Source: Octopus sinensis
Lineage: Eukaryota
Length of the DNA: 64,000 nt
Assembly (NCBI RefSeq): GCF_006345805.1
Contig: NC_043024.1
Coordinates: 10,106,001 to 10,170,000, forward strand
Reading direction: 5' to 3'
The first letter of the stretch is position 1. Every line of letters starts with the position of its first letter. The position numbers were made by a program, and so were the translations under genes. Below are positions 9,814-63,369 of this stretch, in pieces. The notes beneath the pieces are model-generated. The model was not told the DNA's origin, searched no databases, and saw nothing but the letters and a program-made list of their open reading frames with translations.

Positions 9814-10756
9814 TATACATATATTATATATATCATACATATAATATATACATACATATATATATATACATACATAATATATATAATACATATATATATA
9901 TAACATACAAATATATATAATATTATATATATAATATATATATATATATATATTATATTATATATATACGACAGGCTTCTTTCAGTTTCCGTCTACCAAA
10001 TCCACTCACAAGGCATGGGTCGGCCCGGGCTATAGCAGAGAAGACAAGATGCCACGCAGTGGGACTGAACCCGTGTAGCAGAAAGTGAAAATAAGTGTTG
10101 AAACTGTTGCCCTAATTTCTAAAGTGTGTTTTTTTTTTCCTACAAAATGAAACTTGAATTGGCATCTACGAAATTATAGCCACATCTTCAACAAATTCTC
10201 TTGACACCACCCAGCCCGCAATCTGTATGTGATGCAGACACAACAGGAATTCGTTGGAAATATCAAAGAAATTTCATGTTACATACCGTTGGAATTTGTA
10301 GGGTATAAAGCTCGTATTTAAGTTTTCCGTGATCCTTTAATTCCATTTTGGAATCCCTCTCGATGTCAGAAAACGAAACAATTTTAGTGCGCATGCACGA
10401 TACGTGAAAGGGCAATTAGTGGGCGACAAGCATAGATATGAGGAAATGAAAGAACTTTTCGCGGAAAAAGTATAAGTTTTTTTTAATATTTCGAAATCAA
10501 AATTGGGCGCAATTTAAAAGACTGCCGGAAAGCAGTCTATTCACGTGCTAGAAATAGCAGCCAAATTCATACAAACTCTATTTCGCATATATATATATAT
10601 ATATATATAAAGAGCAATAAAGATTCAAGTTAATTTTAAAAAATTTACTTGAATATGGTACCTAACTTAGATGCACCAAAAAAAACTATACTGATTTAAC
10701 AATACAGTAATGTGGGGTGATTATAAGCGAGAAAGAAGCAACAAGAATGGATAGGT

Positions 10757-10847
10757 TTTTAGTACGATCGTTTCATACAAGGACAGGTTTTATTAAAAGT
10801 TGCAAAGAGTACAGCATATAAACGAGTCCCGTACTCATCAGCTAAAA
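10757..10847 (-). ncRNA. Type I hammerhead ribozyme (left arm, minus strand)
   Basis: Reverse complement reads UUUUAG-CUGAUGA-GUACGGGAC...GUCCUUGUAU-GAAAC-GAUC-GUA-CUAAAA. All core nucleotides are present. Confidence 0.82.
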
Positions 10848-11027
10848 TACATGTAAGTTCTCTAGACATCCTAGTGTTTGAGGCTATACTCATGAAGTAA
10901 TGTAGATAATTAAACAGATTTCTAAAGTTCATTAAGTTCTTTAATGAACTTTAGAAATCTGTTTAATTATCTAATTACTTCATGAGTATAGCCTCAAACA
11001 CTAGGATGTCTAGAGAACTTACATGTA

Positions 11028-11116
11028 TTTTAGCTGATGAGTACGGGACTCGTTATATGCTGTAATCTTGCAACTTTTAATAAAACCTGTCCTTGTATGA
11101 AACGATCGTACTAAAA
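11028..11116 (+). ncRNA. Type I hammerhead ribozyme (right arm, plus strand)
   Basis: Stem I ttttag/ctaaaa; ctgatga at 11034-11040; stem II gtacgggac/gtccttgtat; gaaac; palindromic loop gatc; GUA cleavage after 11110. Confidence 0.82.
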
Positions 11117-11173
11117 ACCTATCCATTCTTGTTGCTTCTTTCTCGCGTATATATATATATTATAATATATATG

Positions 11174-11285
11174 ATATTAATTAGAGACAATTGTCTCTAA
11201 TTAATATTATATAATATTTTGCTATAAAATTGGATTCAATCCTAAATCTGATTTTTCCCTGTAAATTGGATTTATTCCCTATTAT
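11174..11285. other. Collapsed copy of the 53.8-kb palindrome family (perfect 34-bp palindrome plus extension)
   Basis: atattaattagagacaa|ttgtctctaattaatat, followed by the reverse complement of ~53797-53870. Confidence 0.8.
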
Positions 11286-11290
11286 ATTAT

Positions 11291-11335
<45 letters not shown>

Positions 11336-39823: not shown

Positions 39824-41489
39824 TATATATATATATGTAGGTCCCGGTTGAGTCGGGGTTAACCACAGTAAATAAGGTACTCAATACATAGCAGAGTAAA
39901 TTAATTTATTTTATAGAAGGAGCTTCTACAGGACTAGAACTGTTTCATTTGAATGAAACAGTTCTAGTCCTGTAGAAGCTCCTTCGATAAAATATATATA
40001 TATATATATGTATATATATAGGTATGTGTGTGTATGTGTTTGTGTGTCTGTGTTTGTCCCCTTAGCACTGCTTGACAACCGATGCTGGTGTGTTTATGTC
40101 CCCGTCACTTAGCGGTTAAGGGGATAATTAGAAGGTAATTATAGGTGCAGGTGTGGTTGAGTGGTAAGAAGTTTGCTTCCCAGCCCCCATGGTTCCAAAC
40201 ATGTGGGGCCAGGTTCAATCCTTCTGACTTCTAAAACAGCCCTGGGCCAACCAAATCCATGTGAGTAAGGAACACAGAGAAGCTGAAAGATACCTATTTC
40301 TTTACTACCCACAAGGGGCTAAACATAGAGGGAACAAACAAGGACAGACATAGGTATTAAGTCGATTACATCGACCCCAGTGTGTAACTGGTACTTAATT
40401 TAGCGACCCCCGAAAGGATGTCTTCTACTATAGCCTCAGGGAGATCAAACCCTTGAGTGGATTTGGGAGACAGAAACTAAACGAAGCCCATTGTATATAT
40501 GTTTGTTGTTTCTTTACTGCCCACAAGGGGCTAGAAACGGAGGGGAGAAACAAGGACAGACAAACGGATTAAGTTGATTAACTGGTACTTAATTTATCGA
40601 CCCCGAAAGGATGAAAGGCAAAGTCGACCTTGGTGGAATTTGAACTCAGAACGTAACGGCAGACGAAATACCTATTTCTTTACTACCCACAAGAGGCTAC
40701 ACACAGAGGGGACAAACAAGGACAGACAAACGGATTAAGTTGATTATAATGACCCCAGTGTGTAACTGGTACTTATTTAATCGACCCCAAAAGGATGAAA
40801 GGCAAAGTTGACCTCGCGGAATTTGAACTCAAAATTTAACGGCAGACGAAATACTGCTAAGCATTTCACTCAGCGTGCTAACGATTTTGCCAGCACGCCG
40901 CCTTCAATATATTATATGTATGTTTGTGTATATGTACATGTATGTGTGTGTCCGTGTGTCCATCCTCATTTTGACGTTGTGCGATAGTTGTAAGTGAGTA
41001 TCCCTGTCATACAAGCAGTGATATTCAGTTCCAATCATCATCATTATCATCATCGTTTAATGTCCGCTTTCCATGCTAGCATGGGTTGGACGGTTCAACT
41101 GGGGTCTGGGAAGCCCGAAGGCTGCACCAGGCCCAGTCATCATCTGGCGGTGTTTTCTACAGCTGGAATGCCCTTCCTAACGCCAACCACTCCGTGAGTG
41201 TAGTGAGTGCTTTTTTATGAAAAAACATGTCGGGCCATGGGAAAACATTACGTTACCTGGAGGGTGAGGAACCGGATGGGAACACAACTGCTAAACAGTA
41301 CAGCTACCTTGTCGAACACCCTAAAAAGTTGTGTATGGCATAACAACTCAGCAGAAATATGCATGGAAGGTACATAGAGCTGATTGCATTCAGATATTGA
41401 GGAATGACTCATCCCCTGCCCTTTATAGAGCAACAAGGGTACCTCAGGTTCTTTTTAAAAACCCATATATTTCCCTGGTTGCATTTCGC

Positions 41490-44110
41490 ACCAGCACCAC
41501 CAGCACCACCAGCACTACCACCAGCACTACCACCACCACCACCACCACCACCAGCACTACCATCACCACCACCATCACCACCACCACACTACCACCAGCA
41601 CTACCATCAGCACACCACCAGCACTACCATCACCACTACCATCACCACCACACCACCACCAGCACCACAACCACCACCACCACCACCACCACCCCACCAC
41701 CATTCACCACCACCACACTCACCATCACCACCACCACCACCACCATCACCACCACCACTACCACCCCACTACCACTACCCCACCACCATCACCACACCAC
41801 CCACCACCACCACCAACCACCATCACCACCACCACCACCACCAGCACCATCAGCACCACCCACCACCACCACCACCACCAACCACCACCAACCACCATCA
41901 GCCAACCACCACCACCACACACCACCACCACCACCACCACCCCACCACCAACCCACCACCCACCACCACCCACCACCCACCACCACCATCACCACCACCA
42001 CCACCCCACAGCCACCATCAGCAACCACCACCACCACACCACCACCACCACCACCACCACCACCACACCACCACCACCACCACCATCACCACCACCACCA
42101 CCACCATCACCACCACCACTACCACCACCACTACCAATACCACCACCATCACCACCACCACACCACCACCACCACCACCATCACCACCACCACCACCACC
42201 AGCACCATCAGCACACCACCACCACCACCACCACACCACCACCACCACCATCAGCACCACCACCACCATCACCACCACCACCCACCACCACCATCAACCA
42301 CCACCACCAACCACCAGAGCACCAATCAGCACCACCACACCACCACCACCACCACCACCATCACCACCAGCACCATCAGCACCACCACCAGCACCACTAC
42401 CACCACCACCACCATCAGCACCACCACCACCACCACCAGCACCATCAGCACCACCAACTACCACCACCACACCATCACCACCAGCACCATCACCACCACC
42501 ACCATCACCACACCACCACCACCACCACCCCACCACCACCACCATCACCACCACCACCACACCAGCACCATCAGCACCACCACCACCACCACCACCACCA
42601 CCACCACCACCACCACCACCCACCACCACCACCACCCCACCACCCCACCACCACCACCCATCACCACCACCACACCACCAGCACCATCAGCACCACCACC
42701 ACCACCACCATCAGCCACCACACCACCACCACCACCACCACCACCACCACCATCACCACCACCACCACCACCAGCACCATCAGCACCACCACACCACCAC
42801 CACCACCACCACCACACACCACACCACAACCACCACCACCATCACCACCACCACCACCACCCATCACCACCACCCACTACCACCACCACTACCACTACCA
42901 CCACCATCACCACCACCACCACCACCACCACCACCACCATCACCACCCACACCACCACCAGCACCATCAGCACCACCACCACCACACCACCACCACCACC
43001 AACCCACCACCATCAGCACCACCACCACCATCACCACCACCACCACCACCACCATCACCACCACACCACCACCAGCACCATCGCCACCACCACCACCACA
43101 CCACCACCACCATCACCACCAGCACCATCAGCACCACCACCAGCACCACTACCACCACCACCACCATCAGCACCACCACCACCACCACCAGCACCCCATC
43201 AGCACCACCACTACCACCACCACCATCACCACCAGCACCATCACCACCACCACCCATCACCACCACCACCACCACCACCACCCCACACCACCAACCCCAT
43301 CCACCACCCCACCACCACCAGCACCATCAGCACCACCACCCACCACCACATCAGCACCACCACCACCACCACCACCACCCCACCACCACCACCACCACCA
43401 TCAGCACCCCCACCACCACCAGCACCATCAGCACCACCCACCACCAGCACCACCACCAGCACTACCATCACCATCACCACCATCACCACCACCACCACCA
43501 CCACCACACCCACCATCAGCACTACCATCCACCACCACCACCATCACCACCACCATCATCACCATCAGCACTACCATCACCACCACCACCATCACCACCA
43601 CCATCATCACCACTACCACCACCACCACCAACACCACCAACCACCACCACCACCATCAGCACCACCACCACCACCACAACCACCATCAGCACTACCATCA
43701 CCACCACACCACACCACCACCACCACCACCACCTCAGCACTACATCACCACCACCACCATCACCACCACCACCACACACCACCACCACCATCACCACCAC
43801 CACCACCACCACCACCCACCACCACCATCAGCACTACCATCACCACCACCACCATCACCACCACCATCATCCCACTACCACCATCACCACCACACACCAC
43901 CACCACCACCATCACCACCACCACCACCACCACCACCACCATCACCACACCACCACCCCCACCACCACCACCACCATCAGCCACTACCATCCACCACCCC
44001 ACCACCACCACCACCACCACCACCCTCAGCACTACCATCACCACCACCACCATCACCACCACCATCATCACCACTACCACCACCACCACCACCACCACCA
44101 CCACCACCAT

Positions 44111-44141
<31 letters not shown>

Positions 44142-44203
44142 AGCACCACCACCACCACCACCAGCACCATCAGCACCACCACTACCACCACTACCACCAC
44201 CAT

Positions 44204-44234
<31 letters not shown>

Positions 44235-45250
44235 AGCACCACCACCACCACCACCAGCACCATCAGCACCACCACTACCACCACTACCACCACCATCAGC
44301 ACCACCACCACCACCAACCAGCACCATCAGCACCACCACCACCACCACCAGCACCATCAGCACCACCACTACCACCACTACCACCACCATCAGCACCACC
44401 ACTACCACCACTACCACCACCATCAGCACCACCACCACCACCACCACTACCACCACTACCAGCACCACCACCAGCACCACCAGCACCACCACCACCATCA
44501 CCACCACCACCACCACCACCACCACCACCACCACCCCACCACCACCACCACCACCACCACCACCACCACTACCACCATCACCACCACCACCACCACCACC
44601 ACCATCAGCACTACCATCACCACCACCACCACCACCACCACCACCACCACCACCACCACCATCAGCACTACCATCACCACCACCACCACCACCACCACCA
44701 CCATCAGCACTACCATCACCACCACCACCATCACCACCACCACCATCACCACCACCACCACCACCATCAGCACATCACCACCACCACCACCACCACCACC
44801 ACCCACCACCATCAGCACTACCATCACCACCACCACCACCACCACCACCACCACCACCATCAGCACTACCATCACCACCACCACCACCACCACCACCACC
44901 ACCACCATCAGCACTACCATCACCACCACACCATCACCACCACCATCATCACCACTACCACCACCACCACCACCACCACCACCACCACCATCAGCACCAC
45001 CACTACACCAATACCACACCATCAGCACCACCACCACCACCACCACCATCAGCCACAACCACCACCACCACCAGCACCATCAGCACCACCACTACCACCA
45101 CTACCACCACCATCAGCACCACCACCACCACCACCACTACCACCACTACCAGCACCACCACCAGCACCACCGCACCAACACCACCATCACCACCACACCA
45201 TCACACCACCACCAACCACCACCACCATCACCACCACCACACCACCACTG
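41490..45250. repeat. ~3.75-kb imperfect (CAC)n trinucleotide tract in ESD intron 5
   Basis: Almost pure cac/cat/cag/tac triplets. The long ORFs here arise from base composition. Confidence 0.95.
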
Positions 45251-45447
45251 AGCATACGGCATGTTCAGTAGGGGGTCAAACACCATAGCGAACAGTCGCA
45301 TAGGGTCCTTCTGTTCCAGACCGTGAAAGATTACCATAAAAGTTTAATCTAAAATCAGTGTGAAATTTTTTAAAGGCTTTGTTTTTTTTAGGGGCATGAA
45401 GGGACAAGGGATGGCAAAGGGTCAAAGAAAAGAAATTTCTGACTCAC

Positions 45448-46075: not shown

Positions 46076-46349
46076 CTGTAAAATGTGAAGGACAACAGTA
46101 ATACAAACAACTATATCCCTTCTTTCCTGAGCGTCAATAATACTTTAATTGTTCCACGTCCTGCGTTGCTGTGTTTTTTTCTCTTTTTTCTGTGTTTTCT
46201 TGTTTGGATTAACTTTATATATATATATATATATATACTGAGCTGAGACCCCCTTCGGTCATGACTGACCATGGGATTGCACCTAGAAAGTTACCCTCCA
46301 AGGTACAAGTTCGGGTAAGGTTGTTTATGGAATACCAGCAGTCGCCCAT

Positions 46350-50258: not shown

Positions 50259-50964
50259 CAGGCTTCTTTTAACATTGACCGAGGCCTTGGCATTATGTCG
50301 TGCTTAAGAAGAAGCCCCATCAGGCTAAGTAAAATTGCAGTAGTGGCAGATACTGGTGTCACACAAATGGCACCTGAGCCAGTGGCACATAAAAGCGCCC
50401 AAAACACTCTCAGAGTGGTTGACATTAGGAAGGGCATCCAGCCTTGTAGAAGCCATACCGGGCCAGTTCAGGGCCTGGTGCAGCCTTTTAGCTTGCCTAC
50501 CCTCAGTCAAACCGTCTAAACCATGACAGTATGGAAAGCGGAATTAACCCTTTCATTACCGTATTTATTTTGAGATGCTCTGTGTTTCCTTCAATTATTT
50601 TAAATATAACAAAGAATTTAGTAAAATAACTTATTTATCATTCAGCTAGTGTTAGGAATATAAATTGTGACTAAGGTTTGGTGGAAGATTTTAATTCAAA
50701 ACTTATGAAAACAAGACATTTGTACTACAGAACCAGAGCTGGTTTCAGCCGGGTTGGTAATGAAAGGGTTAAACAATGATGATGATGATGATAATATATC
50801 ATCCCAGAACCATGTGGTTGCTATGCAAGTTACTTACCACACAGCCACTCCTATGGCTATACACACACACACAAACACAACAGGCTTCTTTTAGCATTAG
50901 GCTACCAAATTCACTCAAAAGTCTTTAGTCAGCTGGAACTATAGTAGAAGACATTTGTCTAAGG

Positions 50965-51183
50965 CAGTGCTTTTCAAACTTTTTGCTAGAGTGGAACCCC
51001 AAGGAGAGATTCCACTGGCTCGAGGAACCCCTCTGCAATAATTTAATAGTCATATGCACACATATCTGCACAGGAGAATTAAAAATTACTGCAGATTTTA
51101 GAACTTTTGTAACTTCTTGCGGAACCCCTGGACTGTACTGGCGGAACCCCAAGGTTCCGCAGAACCCTGGTTGAAGACCACTG
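50965..51183. mobile_element. hAT MITE (219 bp)
   Basis: CAGTG TIRs; TSD gtctaagg / gcctaagg (7 of 8). Confidence 0.85.
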
Positions 51184-51366
51184 GCCTAAGGTACCATGCA
51201 TCGGAACTGATCCCAGGACCTTGTAGTGGGGAAGTAAATTTCTTCCTGCAGGGCCACAATTTAATGATGATGATGAGGTTGTTGTATCAGAAAGGGTCTG
51301 TTGTTCTCCCCTGCCATCTAACCAAGTACCAGTAATTGAATCAGGGACTAAGGGAATTAAACTCAC

Positions 51367-51975: not shown

Positions 51976-52481
51976 AGAGGAGAGAAACAGGTGTGTCTCC
52001 TTTTCTTGACTCCATGCGCTAGTCCTAAAATGGGTGCCCCTGTCATACAAGCAGTGTCCTTCACTCCCAATATACTGCAGAAACATGTCTGACCATGGGG
52101 AAATATTACCTTGTTTGGAAACAAGTGAGAGTTTGTGACAGGAAGGGCACCCAGTCGCAGAAAATCTGCCTCCAATAAACCGCAAGGTGGACACTGAATG
52201 ATAATGATGAATAAAGAATGAACCTGACTTTTATTAAAGTACTTCGCATAGATGTTTGTTACCGCTGGGGATAATGGTGAACCAATTGCTATGCCTGCGA
52301 AGTGCTGATAAATTACGTTTCAATCTGGAAACAAAGAATTCTTCGGCTCGGTCTTAATATCTCGTTGAGGTTTTCAAACGGTATTTAGTGTGTACATGAT
52401 TATTATCGTTGAAATAGGTAAGAAGAAAAACAGGTAAAAGAGAGAAGCAGGAAAAACAAAAGAAGGAAGGGTGTTGTTTAC

Positions 52482-52552
52482 CTGGAATGTTTGAAGACTT
52501 TCTGGAAGCCTCCAAAACATTTGTTCGATGATACCTGTTCAAGATTACTCAT
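52482..52552 (-). CDS. ESD: ESD first coding exon: MSNLEQVSSNKCFGGFQKVFKHS
   Basis: SSNKCFGGxQKVF motif; donor AG|gtaaac. An acceptor (ttttgtcag) 22 nt upstream of the ATG implies an upstream non-coding exon. Confidence 0.92.
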
Positions 52553-53721
52553 TATTACTTTCAAACTAAGAAACCTGACAAAAGTAGAAAAGAAACAACA
52601 GAATGCATGAAAATTCAAGGAATAATGAGAGCAGCCAAGTCATTTAACTATATATATATACATACAGCATATTGTGTGTGTATATCTGTACGCATACATA
52701 CATATACATAAATACATACACACATACACACACACACACACATACATACATTCATGCATGCATACATACATAAATACATACATACATACATACGTATGTA
52801 TGTATATATACGTCCCCGTAACTTAGCGGTTCGGCAAAAGAGACCAATAGAATAAGTACTGGGCTTACAAAGAATAAGTCCCGGAGTCGATTTGCTCGAC
52901 TAAAGGCGGTGCTCCAGCATGGCCGCAGTCAAATGACTGAAACAAGTAAAAGAGTAAAGAGTAAGAGTCTATTGAGGTAAAAAAAACATTCTGTGCCGTA
53001 TGAAAATGTCCCTCGTTTAAGAAACAGATTAGGTTTATTTACATTTGTGAAGAAAAAAGGATACCCTTCCCCCCACCCCTAACCCTAACCCTAACCCTAA
53101 AAGAGATTGAAATGCAATAGATCGATACTAGGGTCATAATTATGGGTGACAATTTCATATGACACCGCTAGAAAAACTGCCGGTCAAACCGAAAAGATCC
53201 CTAACCCTAACCAACCCTAACCCTAAAACAGATTGAAATGCAATAGATCGATACTAGGGTCATAATTATGGGTGACAATTTCATATGACACTGCTAGAAA
53301 AAACTGCCGTTCAAACGGAAAAGATCCCAGCTCGGAGCTAGAAAAACAAATCTTCTTTTGAATAGCGTTAAAGGGTTAAAGAAACCACGACCACCACCAC
53401 TATACAGCGGGGAGGGTTGCTGATGTTAATCCTTAAGCATTCAGATTACTCAGTCAAATGCAATACTCATATAAATTACATTGCTTTGAATTCATCATGC
53501 ATTATTTTGGAGCTTAGATCTTTTGATGAGGTTACTGTTAATTTTCGTAATGATATGGTAGGGTTGGTATTTAATCAACCATGCTAACAGGTTGATGGTG
53601 TTACCACAGCCCGTTTTCCCAGTGAGTAAACATCTAGAGCAGAGGTTTTCAACCAGGGTTCTGCGAGCCAGTGGAATGTTTCCATGGGGTTCCGCTCCCG
53701 CAAAAAGGTTGAAAAGCACTA

Positions 53722-53789
<68 letters not shown>

Positions 53790-53867
53790 ATAAATATTAG
53801 GGAATAAATCCAAATTTACATGGAAAATCAGATTTAGGATTGAATCCAATTTTATAGTAAAATATTA

Positions 53868-54157
53868 TATAATATTAATAGAGACAAAACCACTATTTTG
53901 CAAATCAAACAAAGAAGACTTAATCCAATACATAAAAAAATTTTAATATAAATTAAATAAAATTATATTCGCCACTACAATTGTTTCATGTCTCTTCTCA
54001 GGACATTCATCAGGTGGATTTCAGATGAATGTCCTGAGAAGAGACATGAAACAATTGTAGTGGCGAATATAATTTTATTTAATTTATATTAAACTTTTTT
54101 ATGTATTGGATTAAGTCTTTCTTTGTTTGATTTGCAAAATAGTGGTTTTGTCTCTAA

Positions 54158-54168
<11 letters not shown>
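53868..54168. other. ~300-bp palindrome with ~12-nt loop
   Basis: Arms ...ggacattcatc / gatgaatgtcc..., pairing outward to aatattaatagagacaa / ttgtctctaattaatatt. Confidence 0.92.
53972..54017 (-). ncRNA. Type I hammerhead ribozyme
   Basis: Reverse complement reads CCAC-CUGAUGA-AUGUC-cugagaaga-GACAU-GAAAC-AAUU-GUA-GUGG. Stems I and II are perfect, the core is complete, and loop III is palindromic. Confidence 0.88.
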
Positions 54169-54200
<32 letters not shown>

Positions 54201-54744
54201 TGGTTTTCAACCAGGGTTCCGCCAGTACAGTCCAGGGGTTCCGCAAGAAGTTACAAAACTGCTAAAATCGGCAGTAATTTTAAAGTCTCCTGTGCAGATA
54301 TGTGTGCATAAGACTATTAAATTATTGCAGAGGGGTTCCTCGAGCCAGTGGAATGTTTCCTTGGGGTTCCGCTCCAGCAAAAAGGTTGAAAAGCACTGAT
54401 CTAGAGATTCATGGGGTATATGACACAATAAACAGCTTAGAAAGTACGGTGTTTTATCAACTTTAATTAGGTTACTAATTATAATTTATGCCAGCTGATA
54501 CAAAGACTGTCTGTCTTATCTGTGACAAAGTATTTACACAGAGTCAGTCTACCTGTCATATACAATAGATCTCCTTTAAGTCTGACATTTTCACAGCCTT
54601 TTTTTTACTTGGAGAGGAAGGTAAGAAAGAAGGGGATTTTTCACTGCCACCACCAGCACCACCACCAGTAAATTTATTGAAAGGAGGAGGAGTAGAAGGA
54701 GCAGAGCAATGACAGACCAAGTGAAAAGGCTTATAGTACTAAGG

Positions 54745-56170
54745 GCGGAAGGCGGTGAGCTGGCAGAAGCGTTAGCACGCCGGGCGAAATGCTTAGCGGT
54801 ATTTCGTCTGTCGCTACGTTCTGAGTTCAAATTGTTTATCCTCTCTGTGTTTAGCCCCTTGTGGGTAGTAAAGAAATAGGTATTTCGTCTGCCGTTACGT
54901 TGTGAGTTCAAATTCCACTGAGGTCGACTTTGCCTTTCATCCTTTCGGGGTCGATAAATTAAGTACCAGTTACGCACTGGGGTCGATATAATCGACTTAA
55001 TCCGTTTGTCTGTCCTTGTTTGTCCTCTCTGTGTTTAGCCCCTTGTGGGTAGTAAAGAAATAGGTATTTCGTCTGCCGTTACGTTGTGAGTTCAAATTCC
55101 ACTGAGGTCGACTTTGCCTTTCATCCTTTTGGGGTCAATTAAATAAGTACCAGTTACACACTGGGGTCAATATAATTGACTTAATCCGTTTGTCTGTCCT
55201 TGTTTGTCCTCTCTGTGTTTAGCCCCTTGTGGGTAGTAAAGAAATAGGTATTTCGTCTGCCGTTACGTTGTGAGTTCAAATTCCACTGAGGTCGACTTTG
55301 CCTTTCATCCTTTTGGGGTCAATTAAATAAGTACCAGTTACACACTGGGGTCGATATAATCGACTTAATCCGTTTGTCTGTCCTTGTTTGTCCTCTCTGT
55401 GTTTAGCCCCTTGTGGGTAGTAAAGAAATAGGTATTTCGTCTGCCGTTACGTTGTGAGTTCAAATTCCACTGAGGTCGACTTTGCCTTTCATCCTTTCGG
55501 GGTCGATTAAATAAGTACCAGTTACGCACTGGGGTCGATATAATCGACTTAATCCGTTTGTCTGTCCTTGTTTGTCCTCTCTGTGTTTAGCACCTTGTGG
55601 GTAGTAAAGAAATAGGTATTTCGTCTGCCGTTACGTTGTGAGTTCAAATTCCACTGAGGTCGACTTTGCCTTTCATCCTTTCGGGGTCGATTAAATAAGT
55701 ACCAGTTACGCACTGGGGTCAATATAATTGACTTAATCCGTTTGTCTGTCCTTGTTTGTCCTCTCTGTGTTTAGCCCCTTGTGGGTAGTAAAGAAATAGG
55801 TATTTCGTCTGCCGTTACGTTGTGAGTTCAAATTCCACTGAGGTCGACTTTGCCTTTCATCCTTTCGGGGTCGATTAAATAAGTACCAGTTACGCACTGG
55901 GGTCAATATAATTGACTTAATCCGTTTGTCTGTCCTTGTTTGTCCTCTCTGTGTTTAGCCCCTTGTGGGTAGTAAAGAAATAGGTATTTCGTCTGCCGTT
56001 ACGTTCTGAGTTCAAATTCCACTGAGGTCGACTTTGCCTTTCATCCTTTCGGGGTCGATAAATTAAGTACCAGTTACGCACTGGGGTCGATATAATCGAC
56101 TTAATCCGTTTGTCTGTCCTTGTTTGTCCCCTCTGTGTTTGGCCCCTTGTGGGTAGTAAAGAAATAGGTA
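54745..56170 (+). repeat. SINE-B tandem array (one head, a truncated unit, 7 x 184 bp)
   Basis: Junction aaataggtatttcgtc at 54880, 55064, 55248 ... 56168. Confidence 0.9.
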
Positions 56171-56789
56171 TTTCGTCCTCCTTTATGGTCTGATTTGAAA
56201 TTTTACCGAATAAATTTTGTAAAGAAAAAAAAATAATTAACCAAAGTTATAAAGAAAATGCTGAACAGGAATATTAAAGCGAGTTTAGTATTCGATCAGT
56301 GGTTTATTTTATCGACATCGTATGGGCAAAATGGAAAGCTGACCTTGACAGAATATTTAAAAAAAAATATAGCTAGAGGTATTTATCTGGGGTTGATAAA
56401 ATAGCGATTCTTCCAACGTCTGCGAGAATGTTTAATTGAATATTTAGAATCTCAGTTAAATACTGAGATTTGAGTTATTTATTATACACATATGGTGCTC
56501 AAAACAAGTGAGAGGTGGGGGAAACGGTCGTTTCCGTTAGAAACAGAGAGAGAAACCCGATAAACCCTAAACTAAATACTATAAGGGGTTTAAAGTCCAA
56601 CTACTACGCTATAAATCAGTCTAGCTCATTCACTAAAAACTAACGGTTAACATTTTATAGGCCGCAAACCGACGAAGCCTGCTAAATATACCACCCCAAA
56701 ATCATCGCAGGACGTGTTAGATAATATGATCTTGTTTGCTGTACATAAGAGAAAGATAATTAAGGGTCGGAACGTTTTTGGTTTATAGG

Positions 56790-59540
56790 CTGTACGTATA
56801 AAAGCGTGATGTAAGCCGGTTCACAGACGTATTTAACGGGGGTCGATTTGGGGCTTATTAATTTGTTACACCACGATAATATTGATAATTAAACTGTGTA
56901 AATAATTAAATACTTAATATAGTTAGCGTTTTTTCTTCTACACGAGCAGAGGAAGTTAATATATAAAAAGATACAGAGAAATAAAGGAACTGTATGCCGG
57001 TTCATAGATGTATTTAACCGGGGTCGATTTGGGGCTTATAAATTATTTACACCAAGATAATATTGATAATTAAACTGTGTAAATAATTAAACACTTAATA
57101 TAGTTAGCGTTTTTCTTCTACACGAGCAGAGGAAGTTAATATATAAAAAGATACAGAGAAATAAAGGAACTGTATGCTGGTTCATAGATGTATTTAACCG
57201 GGGTTGATTTGGGGCTTATAAATTTGTTACACCAAGATAATATTGATAATTAAACTCTGTAAATAACACAACGTAACAATTTTCGGATCTTTTGGGTTTG
57301 AACGGCAGTTTTTAACATAATTTCTAGGTAACTAAAAAATGTTAAACTTTGTATACTGGTAGAATGTGTTTATAAAACATCTTTTTCTCTTGGCTTTATT
57401 GAGAAAATTCTATAGATTGTAAGATATTTGTTGGTGTGTTTATGTCCCCGTCACTTACAAAGAATAAGTGCTGGGGTCGAGTTGCTGGATTAAAGGTGGT
57501 GCTCCAGCATGGCTGCAGTCAAATGACTGAAACAAGTAAAAGAGAGAGAGTATGTGTTACATTGTGTAATTTGATCTTGTTTGCTGTACATAACAGAAAG
57601 ATAATTAGGGTCGGAACGTTTTTGGTTTATAGGCTGTACATATAAAAGCGTGATGTAAGCCGGTTCATAGATGTATTTAACCGGGGTTGACTTGGGGCTT
57701 ATAAATTTGTTACACCAAGATAATATTGACAATTAAACAGAGGAATCTTTTCATTTTGAACGGCAGACGTCAACACAATTTCTAGTTAACTAAACACTTT
57801 TAAACTTCGTATAGTGGTAGAATGTGTTCATAAAACATCTTTTTCTCTTGGCTTTATTGAGAAAATTCTATAGTTTGTAAGATATTTTGTCTGAAAATCC
57901 GAGCATTTCGGCAATTTTAACCAATCGATTACCTCCATTCAACTAAAATTATTTGCTGCGTCTAAAACTGAGACAACATCCTGTAACTAACCCTAAACCT
58001 AACCCTAACCCTAAATTTTTTTTCTTAATTGTTAAATTAATTTAATTCCATTGCTTTAGTTTTTTTTTACTCGCGTAACAATTAAATTAATTTAACAAGT
58101 AAGAAAAAAAAATTTAGAGTTAGGGGGTAGGTTTAGGGTTAGTTACAGGATGTTGTCTCAGTTTTAGACGCAGCAAATGATTTTAGCTCAAAAGAGAGCA
58201 TAGGATTGGTTAAAATTCGAAAAATTAAACTACGTTAAACAAACAAATTACAGTTTTCTCAAGAAAACCAAGAGAAAAAAATGTTTTATTTTGACACATT
58301 CTACCAGTATATGAAGTTTTAAAGAGTTTAGTTAACTAGAAATTGTGTTGAAATCTGGCCTTCAAAAGGAAAAGATTTTAAAATGTTTTATTTTTACACA
58401 TTCTACCAGTATACGAAGTTTTAAAGTGTTTAGTTAACTAGAAATTGTGTTGAAATCTGGCCTTGAAAAGGAAAAGATCCAAAAAGGTTTTATTTTGACA
58501 CATTCTACCAGTATACGAAGTTTTAAAGTGTTTAGCTAACTAGAAATTGTTGAAATCTGGCCTTGAAAAGGAAAGGATCCAAAAATGTTTTATTTTGACA
58601 CATTCTACCAGTATACGAAGTTTTAAAATGTTTAGTTAACTAGAAATTGTGTTGAAATCTGGCCTTGAAAAGGAAAAGATCCAAATTGTGTAAATAATTA
58701 AACACTTAATATAGTTAGCGTTTTTCTTCTACACGGGCAGAGGAAGTTAATATATAAAAAGATACAGAGAAATAAAGGAACTGTATGCCGGTTCATAGAT
58801 GTATTTAACCGGGGTTGATTGGGGTTTATAAATTTGTTACACCAAGATAATATTGATAATTAAACTGTGTAAATAATTAAATACTTAATATAGTTAGCGT
58901 TTTTCTTCTACACGAGCAGAGGAAGTTAATATATAAAAAGATACAGAGAAATAAAGGAACTGTATGCCGGTTCACAGATGTATTTAACGGGGTTGATTTG
59001 GGGCTTATAAATTTGTTACACCACGATAATATTCACAATTAAACTGTGTAAATAATTAACCCTTTAGTGTTTAAACTGGCCAAATCCGGCCCAATATATT
59101 CTACATATTTTATATTCAAACTGGCCATATCCAACCTCTCACACCTAACCTACATTGACAGTCTAAAAATAAACAATCACATCATTGAAACCTCAAAGCT
59201 ATGAGATAATGCATGATTAATTAAAAACAATTTAAATAAAAAAGCATTATATTTAACAGTAATCTGAACACTAAAGGGTTAAACACTTAATATAATTAGC
59301 GTTTTTCTTCTACACAAGCAGAGGAAGTTAATATATAGAAAGATACAGAGAAATAAAGGAACTGTATGCCGGTTCATAGATGTATTTAACCGGGGTTGAT
59401 TTGGGGCTTATAAATTTGTTACACCAAGATAATATTGATAATTAAACTGTGTAAATAATTAAACACTTAATATAGTTAGTGTTTTTCTTCTACACAGGCA
59501 GAGGAAGTTAATATATAAAAAGATACAGAGAAATAAAGGG
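56790..59540. repeat. AT-rich ~180-bp satellite-like units interrupted by MITEs
   Basis: attgataattaaact recurs at 56881, 57062, 57242 and again at 58.7-59.5 kb. Confidence 0.85.
57742..58682. mobile_element. Fold-back relative of the GGATC MITE with long inverted arms; right end tandemly repeated
   Basis: Arms contain gcgtctaaaactgagacaacatcctgtaactaaccctaa and its reverse complement. ~102-bp end repeats at 58380-58682. Confidence 0.75.
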
Positions 59541-60273: not shown

Positions 60274-61172
60274 CGACAGGCTTCTTTCAGTTTCCGTCTA
60301 CCAAATCCACTCACAAGGCATTGGTCGGCCTGAGGCTATAGTAGAAGACACTTGCCCAAGGTGCCACGCAGTGGGACTGAACCCGGAACCATGTGGTTGG
60401 TAAACAAGCTACTTACCACACGATGGGCTTCTTTCAGTTTCCGTCTACCAAATCCACTCAAAAGGCTTTGGTCGGCCCGGGGCTATAGCAGAAGACACTT
60501 GCCCAAGATGCCATGCAGTGGGACCGAACCCGGAACCATGTGGTTGGTAAACAAGCTACTTACCACACGATGGGCTTCTTTCAGTTTCTGTCTACCAAAT
60601 CCACCCAAAAGGCTTTGGTCGGCCCGGGGCTATAGCAGATGACACTTGCCCAAGATGCCACACAGTGGGACCGAACCCAGAACCATGTGGTTGGTAAACA
60701 AGCTACTTACCACACGATGGGCTTCTTTCAGTTTCTGTCTACCAAATCCACCCAAAAGTCTTTGGTCGGCCCGAGGCTATAGCAGAAGACACTTGTCCAA
60801 GATGCCACGCAGTGGGACCGAACCCGGAACCATGTGGTTGGTAAACAAGCTACTTACCACACGATGGGCTTCTTTCAGTTTCTGTCTACCAAATCCACCC
60901 AAAAGTCTTTGGTCGGCCCGAGGCTATAGCAGAAGACACTTGTCCAAGATGCCACGCAGTGGGACCGAACCCAGAACCATGTGGTTGGTAAACAAGCTAC
61001 TTACCACACGATGGGCTTCTTTCAGTTTCTGTCTACCAAATCCACCCAAAAGTCTTTGGTCGGCCCAAGGCTATAGCAGAAGACACTTGTCCAAGATGCC
61101 ACGCAGTGGGACCGAACCCAGAACCATGTGGTTGGTAAACAAGCTACTTACCACACAGCCACTCCTGCGCCT
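60010..61172 (-). repeat. SINE-A whose head segment is amplified to 6 x 147 bp
   Basis: gatgggcttctttcag at 60422, 60569, 60716, 60863 and 61010. Confidence 0.9.
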
Positions 61173-62049: not shown

Positions 62050-62313
62050 CAAATTTCTGAAAATGCTTTGGACAGGCAAAGAGTTAATGTCACAGATAGC
62101 CTCACTGTGAAAATATACTTTGAGTAACATAATAAACTGAGGATCTATTCCCTTTGAACGGTAGATCGAGAAATTAATTTTTTGTAACTAAACACTTTCA
62201 AACTTCGTATAGTGGTAGAAAGTGTCATATAAAACATCTTTTACTCTTAGCGTTTTTGAGAACGTGGAAATAACTACAAATATAATGTATTGTGTCTGAC
62301 CCACGTAACACTT

Positions 62314-63369
62314 ATTTCTTTATTGCCCACAAGGGGCTAAATATGGAGGGGACAAACAAGGACAGACAAACGGATAAAGTCGATTACATCGACCCCAGTG
62401 CGTAACTGGTACTTAATTTATCGACCCCGAAAGGATGAAAGGCAAAGTCGACCTCGGCGGAATTTGAACTCAGAACGTAACGGCAGACAAAATACCTATT
62501 TCTTTATTGCCCACAAGGGGCTAAATATAGAGGGGACAAACAAGGACAGACAAAGGCATTAAGCCGATTACATCGACCCCAGTGCGTAACTGGTACTTAA
62601 TTTATCGACCCCGAAAAGATGAAAAGCAAAGTCAGCCTCGGCGGAATTTGAACTCACAACGTAACAGCAGACAAAATACCTATTTCTTTATTACCCACGA
62701 GGGGCTAAACACACAAAGTACAAACGAGGACAGACAAACGGATTAAGTCGATTATATCGACTCCAGTACGTAACTGGTACTTAATTTATCGACCCTGAAA
62801 GGATGAAAAGCAAAGTCGGCCTCGGCGGAATTTGAACTCAGAACGTAACGGCAGACAAAATACCTATTTCTTTACTACCCACAAGGGGCTAAATACAGAA
62901 AGTACAAACGAGGACAGACAAACGGATTAAGTCGATTATATCGAATCCAGTACGTAACTGGTACTTAATTTATCGACCCTGAAAGGATGAAAGGCAAAGT
63001 CGGCCTCGGCGGAATTTGAACTCACAACGTAACGGCAGACGAAATACCTATTTCTTTATTACCAACAAGGGGCTAAACACACAAAGTACAAACAAGGACA
63101 GAAAAAGGGATTAAGTCGATTATATCGACTCCAGTACGTAACTGGTACTTAATTTATCGACCCCGAAAAGATGAAAGGCAAGTCGGCCTCGGCGGAATTT
63201 GAACTCAGAACGTAACGGCAGACGAAATACTGCTACGCATTTCGCCCAGCGTGCTAACGTTTCTGCCAGCTCGCCTTATTATTGTTTTGTTTTTTTTTGT
63301 AAAGTCAGACGAAATGGTGCTAAACATTTTGCCCGGCGCGCTAACTATTCTGCCAGCTCACCCCCTCTA
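62314..63369 (-). repeat. SINE-B array (5 x 184 bp plus an extra head) flanked by a 16-bp direct repeat
   Basis: gacccacgtaacactt at 62298-62313 and 63370-63385. Confidence 0.85.

What the first reader, a model, noticed from the sequence alone, without database searches (positions are those of the whole stretch)
53972..54017. Textbook hammerhead on the ESD sense strand 1.4 kb upstream of the first coding exon's acceptor
Stems I and II are perfect, the core is complete and loop III is AAUU. The mirror arm reads CAGAUGA and lacks stem I, so only the ESD-sense copy is competent. The ESD ATG exon begins with an acceptor, so this motif may lie in a 5'-UTR intron, where cleavage would compete with splicing and with the masking hairpin.
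Basis: partly seen in the sequence, partly recalled or inferred. Interest (0 to 1): 0.7.

Follow-up and report, generated by a model that had tools for sequence, protein, structure and literature searches.

The report
Transposon-borne hammerhead inside a palindrome
The hammerhead ribozyme motif upstream of the octopus ESD gene is really there. It is a weak, dimer-type hammerhead carried by a small mobile repeat that inserted as a 314-bp palindrome. That palindrome would lock the motif into a hairpin, so it is most likely a transposon remnant and not a regulator of ESD.

Summary
On the minus strand, 54017->53972 reads CCAC-CUGAUGA-AUGUC(CUGAGAAGA)GACAU-GAAA-C(AAUU)G-UA|GUGG. This is a complete type-I hammerhead core with predicted cleavage between 53976 and 53975. 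ESD runs on that strand, and an acceptor precedes its ATG exon.

The motif is not a lone gene-specific ribozyme. The window is Octopus sinensis. The motif belongs to a repeat family I call E. A solo ~195-bp copy sits in an O. vulgaris ESD intron and is absent from the orthologous (TA)n site in O. sinensis.

The ESD-upstream copy is a head-to-head inverted dimer (53862-54175) inserted in a (TA)n tract. Its mirror copy is cut off inside the core. Two other hammerhead families in the same ~300 kb of Octopus DNA show the same layout. Hammerhead motifs number 3 in the window against 0.023 expected by chance.

This matches the hammerheads of Penelope-like retroelements, but no RT/GIY-YIG gene was found.

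In this copy helix III is unstable (p=0.03), the 10.1-11.1 pair is A-U, helix I has only 4 bp, and there is no tandem partner. The -214 kcal/mol hairpin is transcribed complement-first.

A role in ESD regulation is unsupported, and the TSS is unknown. Verdict: new member of a known kind, low to moderate interest.

The parts
53972..54017 (-). Complete type-I hammerhead motif. Helix I is CCAC/GUGG, the core is CUGAUGA...GAAA, helix II is AUGUC/GACAU, and helix III is A-U and C-G with an AAUU loop. The predicted cut is after A53976.
   Evidence: Sequence; descriptor hit; identical in O. vulgaris L003 8545-8590 and in the second O. sinensis contig L004 8543-8588.
54012..54023 (-). The 12-nt asymmetric centre of the palindrome. 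It belongs to the sense copy and supplies the 5' strand of helix I (CCAC) plus C3 and U4 of the core.
   Evidence: Homology with the solo copy L003 15769-15822 runs through this spacer (TCUGAAA[U/A]CCACCUGAUGA); inverted-repeat map.
53862..54011 (-). Sense arm of the inverted dimer. It is element E in its long form: hammerhead, a ~95-nt AT-rich segment between two UAGUGG repeats, then the tail GUGGUUUUGUCUCUAUUAAUAUU.
   Evidence: Self-BLAST 53862-54175 against its reverse complement, 94% over 321 columns; arm alignment shows 3 single-base indels and one mismatch next to a further indel.
54024..54175 (+). Mirror arm. It is the same element on the other strand, 5'-truncated at G5 of the hammerhead core, so it reads (CA)GAUGA and lacks the 5' strand of helix I.
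53790..53861 (-). 3' tail ('X') of the sense copy. It is present on one side of the palindrome only and runs into (TA)n.
   Evidence: 93-97% identical to window 11191-11293 and to L003 15817-15930.
53722..53789 (.). (AT)n microsatellite on the left of the insertion.
   Evidence: TRF; sequence.
54165..54197 (.). (AT)n microsatellite on the right of the insertion. Beyond it lies a SINE-like repeat (54195-54421) with at least 5 copies in the window.
52482..52574 (-). First coding exon of ESD paralog 1 (context). The acceptor AG is at 52576-52575, the ATG at 52552-52550, and the donor GT begins at 52481.
   Evidence: tblastn with human ESD recalled from memory; sequence; CDS start of XP_036370427 in L001.
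10727..11147 (.). Related feature: a ~420-bp palindrome made of two copies of another hammerhead family (F2). Complete motifs lie at 10757-10847 (-) and 11028-11116 (+), with a 4-nt centre and (TA)n on the right.
11156..11293 (.). Related feature: an extremely 5'-truncated inverted pair of element E. Only the tails remain, joined as GAGACAA|TTGTCTC (centre 11190|11191), with tail X on one side and (TA)n flanks.

Best explanation
The 46-nt motif is a hammerhead of the minimal, dimer-type kind that retroelements carry in animal genomes. It sits near the 5' end of a small AT-rich mobile repeat, which I call E. E is about 185 nt in its short form and about 290 nt in its long form, and its 3' end runs into (TA)n.

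Upstream of ESD, E is present as a head-to-head inverted dimer with its 3' ends pointing outwards. The sense copy runs 14 nt further 5' than the mirror copy. That is why one arm has a complete core and the other starts at G5.

The most likely origin (inferred) is retrotransposition into a (TA)n tract with fold-back, or second-strand priming, of a 5'-truncated cDNA. This is the behaviour described for Penelope-like elements.

For the element, the hammerhead would act as a double hammerhead. Two copies pair through the 8-nt palindrome ACAAUUGU to build a stable helix III, which would process multimeric or paired transcripts (inferred from the fold and the literature).

At the ESD locus the motif most likely does nothing catalytic, for four reasons:
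- There is no second copy in the same orientation.
- Helix III is unstable in the monomer.
- The 10.1-11.1 pair is A-U and helix I has only 4 bp.
- In an ESD-sense transcript the exact complement is made first, so the ribozyme is zipped into a ~150-bp perfect hairpin.

The locus is therefore a transposon relic shared by O. sinensis and O. vulgaris, not a dedicated regulator of ESD.
For: Shown:
- The window is O. sinensis CM016886.1.
- The palindrome and motif are identical in a second O. sinensis contig and in O. vulgaris, so they are not an assembly artefact.
- A solo, non-palindromic copy carrying the same hammerhead (8-bp helix I AAAACCAC/GUGGUUUU) lies at L003 15757-15951. It is flanked by (TA)n and is absent from the orthologous (TA)n site at window 46215-46237.
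- Further copies have different inverted junctions: L003 31649-31731, window 11156-11293 and L005 18319-18598.
- The solo copy has no terminal inverted repeats (score 6 against a shuffle mean of 6.8).
- Hammerhead motifs are enriched: 3 in the window against 0.023 per shuffle.
- Families F2 and F3 also lie in palindromes with 4-27-nt centres and 3' ends at (TA)n. A solo F2 leader runs further 5' than the F2 palindrome centre.
- All three families have a helix III of A-U plus C-G with a palindromic tetraloop: AAUU, GAUC or AUAU.
- In the monomer, helix III has p=0.03 while helices I and II have p about 0.9-0.99. Two copies cofold with an 8-bp intermolecular helix III at -24.2 kcal/mol.
- The hairpin folds at -214 kcal/mol, z=-35.7.

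From the literature:
- Metazoan type-I hammerheads have a 1-2-bp helix III with a 2-4-nt palindromic loop and work as dimers.
- PLE hammerheads have a 4-5-bp helix I, often occur as dual motifs on opposite strands, and mostly sit in truncated copies.
- A single such motif showed no detectable cleavage (PMC4209133).
- PLEs form inverted 5'-truncated copies and prefer microsatellites, including (TA)n (PMC8557442).
Against: - No reverse transcriptase or GIY-YIG endonuclease gene was found in the ~300 kb of Octopus DNA I could reach. The link to Penelope-like elements therefore rests on architecture only.
- Only three independent copies of the E hammerhead are available. They are about 92% identical, so there is no covariation. 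The other two have an A.A mismatch at the base of helix II.
- The conserved G10.1-C11.1 pair is missing.
- Tail X occurs on one side only in four loci. The fold-back model explains this only with an extra assumption, namely internal priming at UAUAUA.
- No RNA data were available, so neither transcription of the site nor absence of cleavage is shown.
Confidence: 0.72

Rival explanations
1. One reading: the hammerhead lies in a 5'-UTR intron of ESD and acts in cis. Cleavage would compete with splicing and be gated by the masking hairpin, and this would tune ESD mRNA output.
For: The motif is on the ESD-sense strand, 1.4 kb upstream of an exon that begins at an acceptor. The acceptor position is conserved in Argonauta. 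The core is complete. Intronic hammerheads with a proposed role in mRNA biogenesis exist in amniotes (mentioned in PMC7229834).
Against: It is a copy of a mobile repeat, and strand choice is a 50% coincidence. Helix III has p=0.03 and there is no partner copy. The complement is transcribed first, giving a -214 kcal/mol hairpin. Conservation is seen only between two very close species, and nothing similar lies upstream of Argonauta ESD. The TSS is unknown.
Confidence: 0.03
2. The motif is a chance match inside an AT-rich palindrome and has no ribozyme ancestry.
For: No Rfam hammerhead hit even at E<=10. The 46-mer folds no better than shuffles (z=-1.1) and its MFE is not the catalytic fold. The 10.1-11.1 pair is A-U. 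The other E copies have mismatches in helix II. There is no covariation.
Against: The expected number is 0.023 per window against 3 observed. The motif recurs in independent copies of the same repeat. It shares the sequence GAAACAAUUGUA, its position within the element, the (TA)n 3' end and the inverted-dimer layout with families F2 and F3, which have canonical cores. Rfam also misses F3.
Confidence: 0.07
3. The unit is a foldback or MITE-type DNA transposon with long terminal inverted repeats that targets TA. The hammerhead is incidental cargo.
For: It is a near-perfect palindrome flanked by (TA)n on both sides. Interior deletions with conserved ends, such as the mini-palindrome at 11156-11225, resemble deletion derivatives of DNA transposons.
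Against: The polymorphic solo copy has no terminal inverted repeats. The inverted junctions differ from locus to locus while the 3' ends are constant. The same layout is seen for three unrelated hammerhead families, and hammerheads are known from retroelements.
Confidence: 0.08
4. The relevant feature is the long hairpin itself. It would be a source of small RNAs, a substrate for A-to-I editing, or a fragile cruciform-forming site. The hammerhead would be irrelevant.
For: The hairpin has ~150-bp arms that are ~97% matched, at -214 kcal/mol. Sub-threshold matches to many miRNA precursor models appear.
Against: Those matches are far below gathering scores and are generic for inverted repeats (the same pattern appears for F3; caveat stated in PMC6962438). 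There are no expression data. This reading does not conflict with the transposon origin.
Confidence: 0.05

Closest known systems
Minimal hammerheads of Penelope-like retroelements (Cervera and de la Pena 2014, PMC4209133)
   Same: Type-I topology. Short helix I (4-5 bp). Helix III reduced to 1-2 bp with a palindromic loop, implying action as a dimer. Frequent dual motifs close together on opposite strands. Most copies are solitary or truncated. Insertion into microsatellites and inverted 5'-truncated copies (PMC8557442).
   Different: No RT/GIY-YIG ORF or pseudo-LTR was found next to any copy here. Helix II of E has 5 bp with no unpaired base after A9. The otherwise conserved G10.1-C11.1 pair is A-U. 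The mobile unit seems to be only ~185-290 nt.
Metazoan non-LTR retrozymes with type-I hammerheads (Cervera and de la Pena 2020, PMC7229834)
   Same: Small (170-400 nt), AT-rich, non-coding repeats carrying a type-I hammerhead. Their helix III has 2 bp and a tetraloop, described as typical of invertebrates.
   Different: Retrozymes occur as head-to-tail tandem arrays and give highly self-paired circular RNAs. No tandem E copies were seen, and the solo E RNA is not unusually structured (z=+0.26). Here the copies are inverted, not tandem.
Double hammerheads of newt satellite 2 and avocado sunblotch viroid (Forster et al. 1988, cited in PMC4209133)
   Same: A weak helix III with a palindromic loop, so that two copies form one extended helix III. 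Here that would be ACAAUUGU, 8 bp.
   Different: Those act on tandem multimeric transcripts. At the ESD locus there is a single competent copy, and it is paired to its own complement.
Conserved intronic hammerheads of amniotes (HH9/HH10; from my knowledge, and mentioned in PMC7229834)
   Same: A hammerhead possibly located inside an intron on the sense strand of a host gene.
   Different: Those are single-copy, deeply conserved and fold stably as monomers. This one is a repeat copy, is shared only by two sister species, and is unstable as a monomer.

Membership tests
Hammerhead ribozyme (motif level) | Conserved core C3 U4 G5 A6 N7 G8 A9 ... G12 A13 A14, an A15.1-U16.1 pair, and a cleavage nucleotide H17 that is not G | tested here: met
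   CUGAUGA ... GAAA ... U-A at 54013-53976 on the minus strand.
Hammerhead ribozyme (motif level) | Three helices around the core (type I: open helix I, closed helices II and III) | tested here: met
   Helix I has 4 bp, helix II 5 bp and helix III 2 bp. In the isolated 46-mer, helices I and II have p about 0.9-0.99 but helix III only 0.03.
Hammerhead ribozyme (motif level) | G10.1-C11.1 pair at the base of helix II (highly conserved) | tested here: not met
   A-U in the window copy; A.A in L003 15.8k and 31.6k. PMC4209133 calls this pair highly conserved.
Hammerhead ribozyme (motif level) | Tertiary contacts between helix I (loop or bulge) and loop 2, needed for fast cleavage in vivo | tested here: inconclusive
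   Helix I has 4 bp (8 continuous bp in the solo copy) with no loop or bulge. No recognisable contact motif, but none was modelled.
Hammerhead ribozyme (motif level) | Match to a curated covariance model (Rfam Hammerhead_1, _3, _II, HH9, HH10) | tested here: not met
   No hit at gathering score or at E<=10. This carries little weight because the canonical-core F3 copies are also missed.
Hammerhead ribozyme (motif level) | Site-specific self-cleavage | not testable with these tools
   Needs in vitro transcription of monomer, dimer and whole-palindrome constructs.
Penelope-like element hammerhead / truncated PLE copy | Short helix I and a 1-2-bp helix III with a palindromic loop (dimer-type architecture) | tested here: met
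   CCAC/GUGG; ACAAUUGU is an 8-nt palindrome; cofolding gives an intermolecular helix III. Criteria are from PMC4209133.
Penelope-like element hammerhead / truncated PLE copy | Inverted 5'-truncated copies, dual motifs on opposite strands, and insertion in microsatellites | tested here: met
   Head-to-head dimers of E, F2 and F3 with variable junctions and 3' ends at (TA)n. Criteria are from PMC8557442 and PMC4209133.
Penelope-like element hammerhead / truncated PLE copy | Motif lies in the pseudo-LTR of an element encoding a reverse transcriptase plus a GIY-YIG endonuclease | tested here: not met
   No such ORF or motif in the window or L001-L007 (ORF scan, regex, translation upstream of solo F2). 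Only ~300 kb could be examined, so a partner elsewhere in the genome is not excluded.
Metazoan non-LTR retrozyme | Head-to-tail tandem repeats of 150-450 bp, each with a type-I hammerhead | tested here: not met
   No direct tandem copies of E, F2 or F3 in any locus; all pairs are inverted.
Metazoan non-LTR retrozyme | Monomer RNA is highly self-paired and is expressed as circular RNA | tested here: not met
   Solo E RNA folds at -27 kcal/mol, z=+0.26 against shuffles. Circularity is not testable here.
Gene-resident regulatory hammerhead (amniote intronic type) | Conservation at the orthologous position across distant species | tested here: inconclusive
   Present in O. sinensis and O. vulgaris, where flanking DNA is also 95-98% identical. 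Nothing comparable upstream of Argonauta ESD. O. bimaculoides could not be fetched.
MITE / foldback DNA transposon | Terminal inverted repeats at the ends of the mobile unit, with the same structure in all copies | tested here: not met
   The solo polymorphic copy has no TIR. Junctions differ between loci.

The most novel reading that the evidence does not exclude
The hairpin-masked hammerhead is a conditional switch in the ESD 5'-UTR intron. When the ~150-bp perfect duplex is destabilised, the ribozyme arm would be freed. It could then pair with another E transcript through ACAAUUGU and cut the pre-mRNA, lowering ESD output. One possible destabiliser is A-to-I hyper-editing, which from general knowledge is unusually extensive in coleoid cephalopods. 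A weaker form of this reading: E is a still-active ~185-nt hammerhead-bearing retroelement that spreads without tandem arrays and seeds palindromes at (TA)n tracts near genes.
Probability: 0.03. Interest if true: 0.8.

Novelty: new member of a known kind. Interest (0 to 1): 0.25.

Why it matters
If this reading is right, the locus is ordinary for ESD biology. It is still a useful example, because it shows that a complete hammerhead core next to a gene can be explained by its repeat context.

Cephalopod genomes evidently carry several families of dimer-type hammerheads on small mobile repeats, and at least one shows a presence/absence difference between O. vulgaris and O. sinensis. The searchable literature gave only a count of 235 Hammerhead_1 hits in the giant squid (PMC6962438). 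Rfam models miss all three families seen here, so such elements are probably under-annotated.

The regular fold-back dimer arrangement at (TA)n tracts is also a clean record of how these elements integrate. It creates long perfect palindromes close to genes.

Tried and rejected
- Rfam at gathering score and at E<=10 on 331-nt and 71-nt slices gave no hammerhead hits, only generic hairpin/miRNA matches. I rejected this as evidence against the motif after the canonical-core F3 pair was also missed.
- I considered a chance motif and rejected it on the shuffle control and the family context.
- I considered an assembly artefact and rejected it. The same palindrome is in two O. sinensis contigs and in an independent O. 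vulgaris assembly.
- The MITE/TIR model was rejected for the solo copy.
- The search for a Penelope-like ORF found nothing (ORF lists, a GIY-YIG regex, translation upstream of solo F2).
- A protein search with a LINE RT fragment, meant to harvest more Octopus loci, returned one Octopus protein. Its locus, L007, holds no E copy.
- O. bimaculoides ESD is not on record, so no more distant orthologue was available.
- An exact-pattern scan of the metagenome collection found 0 matches.
- A look-up of the 34-aa ORF across the palindrome centre, tried as a route to transcript contigs, found nothing on record.
- GC profile and tandem-repeat maps of the 11-kb region between the two divergent ESD genes gave no clue to the TSS.
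- The L003 31.6k copy could not be scored as present or absent in O. sinensis, because homology between the species ends just before it.

Full report
**1. The observation**

Reading the minus strand from 54017 to 53972 gives CCAC CUGAUGA AUGUC CUGAGAAGA GACAU GAAA C AAUU G UA GUGG. This is a complete type-I hammerhead.
- Helix I is CCAC/GUGG.
- The core is CUGAUGA with GAAA.
- Helix II has 5 bp and a 9-nt loop.
- Helix III consists of A15.1-U16.1 and C-G, closed by AAUU.
- The cleavage triplet is GUA, which puts the scissile bond between 53976 and 53975.

The + strand arm reads AUUUCAGAUGA... and cannot form helix I. ESD exons are on the minus strand (tblastn with a human ESD sequence recalled from memory). 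The ATG at 52552-52550 lies 22 nt after ...ttttctacttttgtcag|. The same acceptor position is seen in Argonauta hians, so a 5'-UTR intron is plausible.

A descriptor of my own finds 3 motifs in the window. It requires CUGANGA, helix II, GAAA, helix III of at least 2 bp, U-H, and helix I. It finds 0.023 motifs per dinucleotide-preserving shuffle.

**2. Surroundings**

The motif sits at the centre of a near-perfect palindrome, 53862-54175. The arms differ by three single-base indels and one mismatch next to a further indel, and a 12-nt spacer (54012-54023) separates them. CCAC and the first two core bases come from that spacer.

As RNA the palindrome folds at -214 kcal/mol (z=-35.7). The 46-mer alone folds at -7.9 kcal/mol (z=-1.1). 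The catalytic fold evaluates at -3.6 kcal/mol, with helix III at probability 0.03.

(AT)n tracts flank the palindrome on both sides. Beyond them lie SINE-like repeats with several copies in the window.

**3. Source and orthologues**

ESD homologues identify the organism. The best hit is Octopus sinensis XP_036370427, and its locus L001 is 100% identical to the window. From that mapping, the window is CM016886.1:10106001-10170000.

The same palindrome, with an identical motif, is present in a second O. sinensis contig (L004) and in O. vulgaris (L003). It is therefore real and predates the split of these sister species. The flanks are equally similar (95-98%), so this says nothing about selection. 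Argonauta aligns only in exons, and O. bimaculoides could not be fetched.

**4. The motif belongs to a mobile repeat**

In an ESD intron of O. vulgaris, L003 15757-15951 holds a non-palindromic copy. It reads:

(TA)n-UUGAAUAGAAGGUCUG-AAAACCAC-CUGAUGA-AUGUC-CUUAGAAGU-GACAA-GAAA-CAAUUG-UA-GUGGUUUU-GUCUCUAAUUAAUAUU..., then the tail, ending in UUAUUAUUA-(UA)n.

The orthologous site in O. sinensis (window 46215-46237) is an uninterrupted (TA)n. This is a clean presence/absence difference, so the unit was mobile recently.

Homology between this solo copy and the window copy runs through the 12-nt spacer (UCUGAAA[U/A]CCACCUGAUGA). The spacer therefore belongs to the sense copy, and the mirror copy is simply truncated at G5. 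CAGAUGA is a junction, not a mutated core.

Other copies have other inverted junctions:
- L003 31649-31731: a 28-nt inverted tail joined to a sense copy.
- Window 11156-11293: tails only, joined as GAGACAA|TTGTCTC.
- L005 18319-18598: an older, diverged pair.

The solo copy has no terminal inverted repeats.

**5. The same pattern in other hammerhead families**

The descriptor also finds two other families in the ~300 kb of Octopus DNA held.
- **F2** reads UUUUAG-CUGAUGA-G...U-GAAA-C GAUC G-UA-CUAAAA. It forms a ~420-bp palindrome at window 10727-11147 with a 4-nt centre.
- **F3** reads CUUUC-CUGAUGA-GAAGA...UCUUC-GAAA-C AUAU G-UC-GAAAG. It forms palindromes at L005 18640-18920 (27-nt centre) and 50870-51240 (14-nt centre).

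A solo F2 copy (L006 17859-17949) has a leader that continues 5' of the point where the window's F2 palindrome folds back.

In every case the 3' ends are constant and abut (TA)n, the 5' ends vary, and the centres are short. This is what fold-back of 5'-truncated copies would give. It is not what a transposon with fixed inverted termini would give.

**6. Comparison with the literature**

- Metazoan type-I hammerheads typically have a helix III of 1-2 bp capped by a 2-4-nt palindromic loop and act as dimers (PMC4209133).
- PLE hammerheads have a 4-5-bp helix I. They are often found as two motifs 100-700 bp apart on opposite strands, and mostly occur in truncated copies (PMC4209133).
- A single such motif showed no detectable self-cleavage, and dimers cleaved weakly (PMC4209133).
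- PLEs form inverted 5'-truncated copies and favour microsatellites, including (TA)n (PMC8557442).
- Invertebrate retrozyme hammerheads also have a 2-bp helix III with a tetraloop, but they occur in head-to-tail arrays (PMC7229834).

Here ACAAUUGU is an 8-nt palindrome. Two copies cofold with an intermolecular helix III at -24.2 kcal/mol, which is the double-hammerhead geometry. I found no tandem copies. I also found no RT/GIY-YIG ORF. The solo RNA is not rod-like. The PLE assignment is therefore by architecture only, and retrozyme membership fails on the tandem criterion.

**7. How it most likely works**

For the element (inferred), the hammerhead would be active only when two copies pair, as in other dimer-type hammerheads.

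At the ESD locus the conditions for cleavage are missing.
- There is one competent copy and no tandem partner.
- The base of helix II is A-U, where a G-C pair is otherwise conserved.
- Helix I has only 4 bp, because ~95 nt separate GUGG from the UUUU that extends helix I to 8 bp in the solo copy.
- In an ESD-sense transcript, 54175->54024 is made before the ribozyme arm. Each ribozyme nucleotide can therefore pair with a waiting complement as it emerges.

That core positions such as U4 are essential is established knowledge. It makes the truncated mirror copy inert on the other strand as well.

**8. What remains open**

- The TSS of ESD-1 is unknown. The 11-kb region it shares with a divergent ESD paralog is filled with tandem arrays and gives no compositional clue.
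- No RNA data could be reached.
- Only three independent E hammerheads are available, and they are too similar to show covariation. Two of them carry an A.A mismatch at the base of helix II. The catalytic competence of the family itself is therefore unproven.

**9. Verdict**

The best explanation is a transposon-borne, dimer-type hammerhead frozen in a fold-back palindrome. It is a new member of a known kind. There is no support for a role in ESD expression.

Noticed in passing
window 10727-11147: A ~420-bp palindrome made of two complete hammerheads of another family (F2): 10757-10847 on the minus strand and 11028-11116 on the plus strand. It has a 4-nt centre and (TA)n on its right. Rfam does not detect either motif.
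   Followed up: partly
L003 15757-15951 vs window 46215-46237: A solo ~195-bp hammerhead-bearing element is present in an ESD intron of O. vulgaris and absent at the orthologous (TA)n site of O. sinensis. This indicates recent mobility.
   Followed up: yes
window 52552 (-) and ~63,720 (+); L005, L006: Two ESD (S-formylglutathione hydrolase) paralogs lie head-to-head about 11.2 kb apart. NCBI flags paralog 1 as LOW QUALITY PROTEIN. The O. vulgaris model of paralog 2 has two esterase domains, and hammerhead pairs 17.4 kb apart suggest a segmental duplication there.
   Followed up: partly
window 54832-56177 and 62313-63230: A 184-bp tandem array (7.3 copies, 97% matches) and a second array of the same unit in reverse orientation (5 copies) flank much of the region between the two ESD genes. 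A similar unit occurs just upstream of Argonauta ESD.
   Followed up: no
window 60279-61156; 56810-59059: Further tandem arrays with periods of 147, 180 and 102 bp fill the intergenic region. The 147-bp unit looks like the common Octopus SINE.
   Followed up: no
window 41331-45251: A 3.9-kb stop-free, low-complexity stretch (His/Pro/Thr-rich in two frames) lies inside an ESD intron. It is probably a long compound microsatellite and not a gene.
   Followed up: no
window 53963-54072; L005 18659-18883: Long inverted repeats give many sub-threshold Rfam matches to miRNA precursor families (for example MIR7533 at 57 bits against a gathering score of 230). This is a generic hairpin artefact.
   Followed up: yes
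L005 18319-18598 and L003 37082-37184: Older, diverged copies (76-77% identity) of the long tail segment of element E carry no hammerhead. This suggests that the long form of E is a composite of a hammerhead module and an older AT-rich repeat, joined at UAGUGG.
   Followed up: partly
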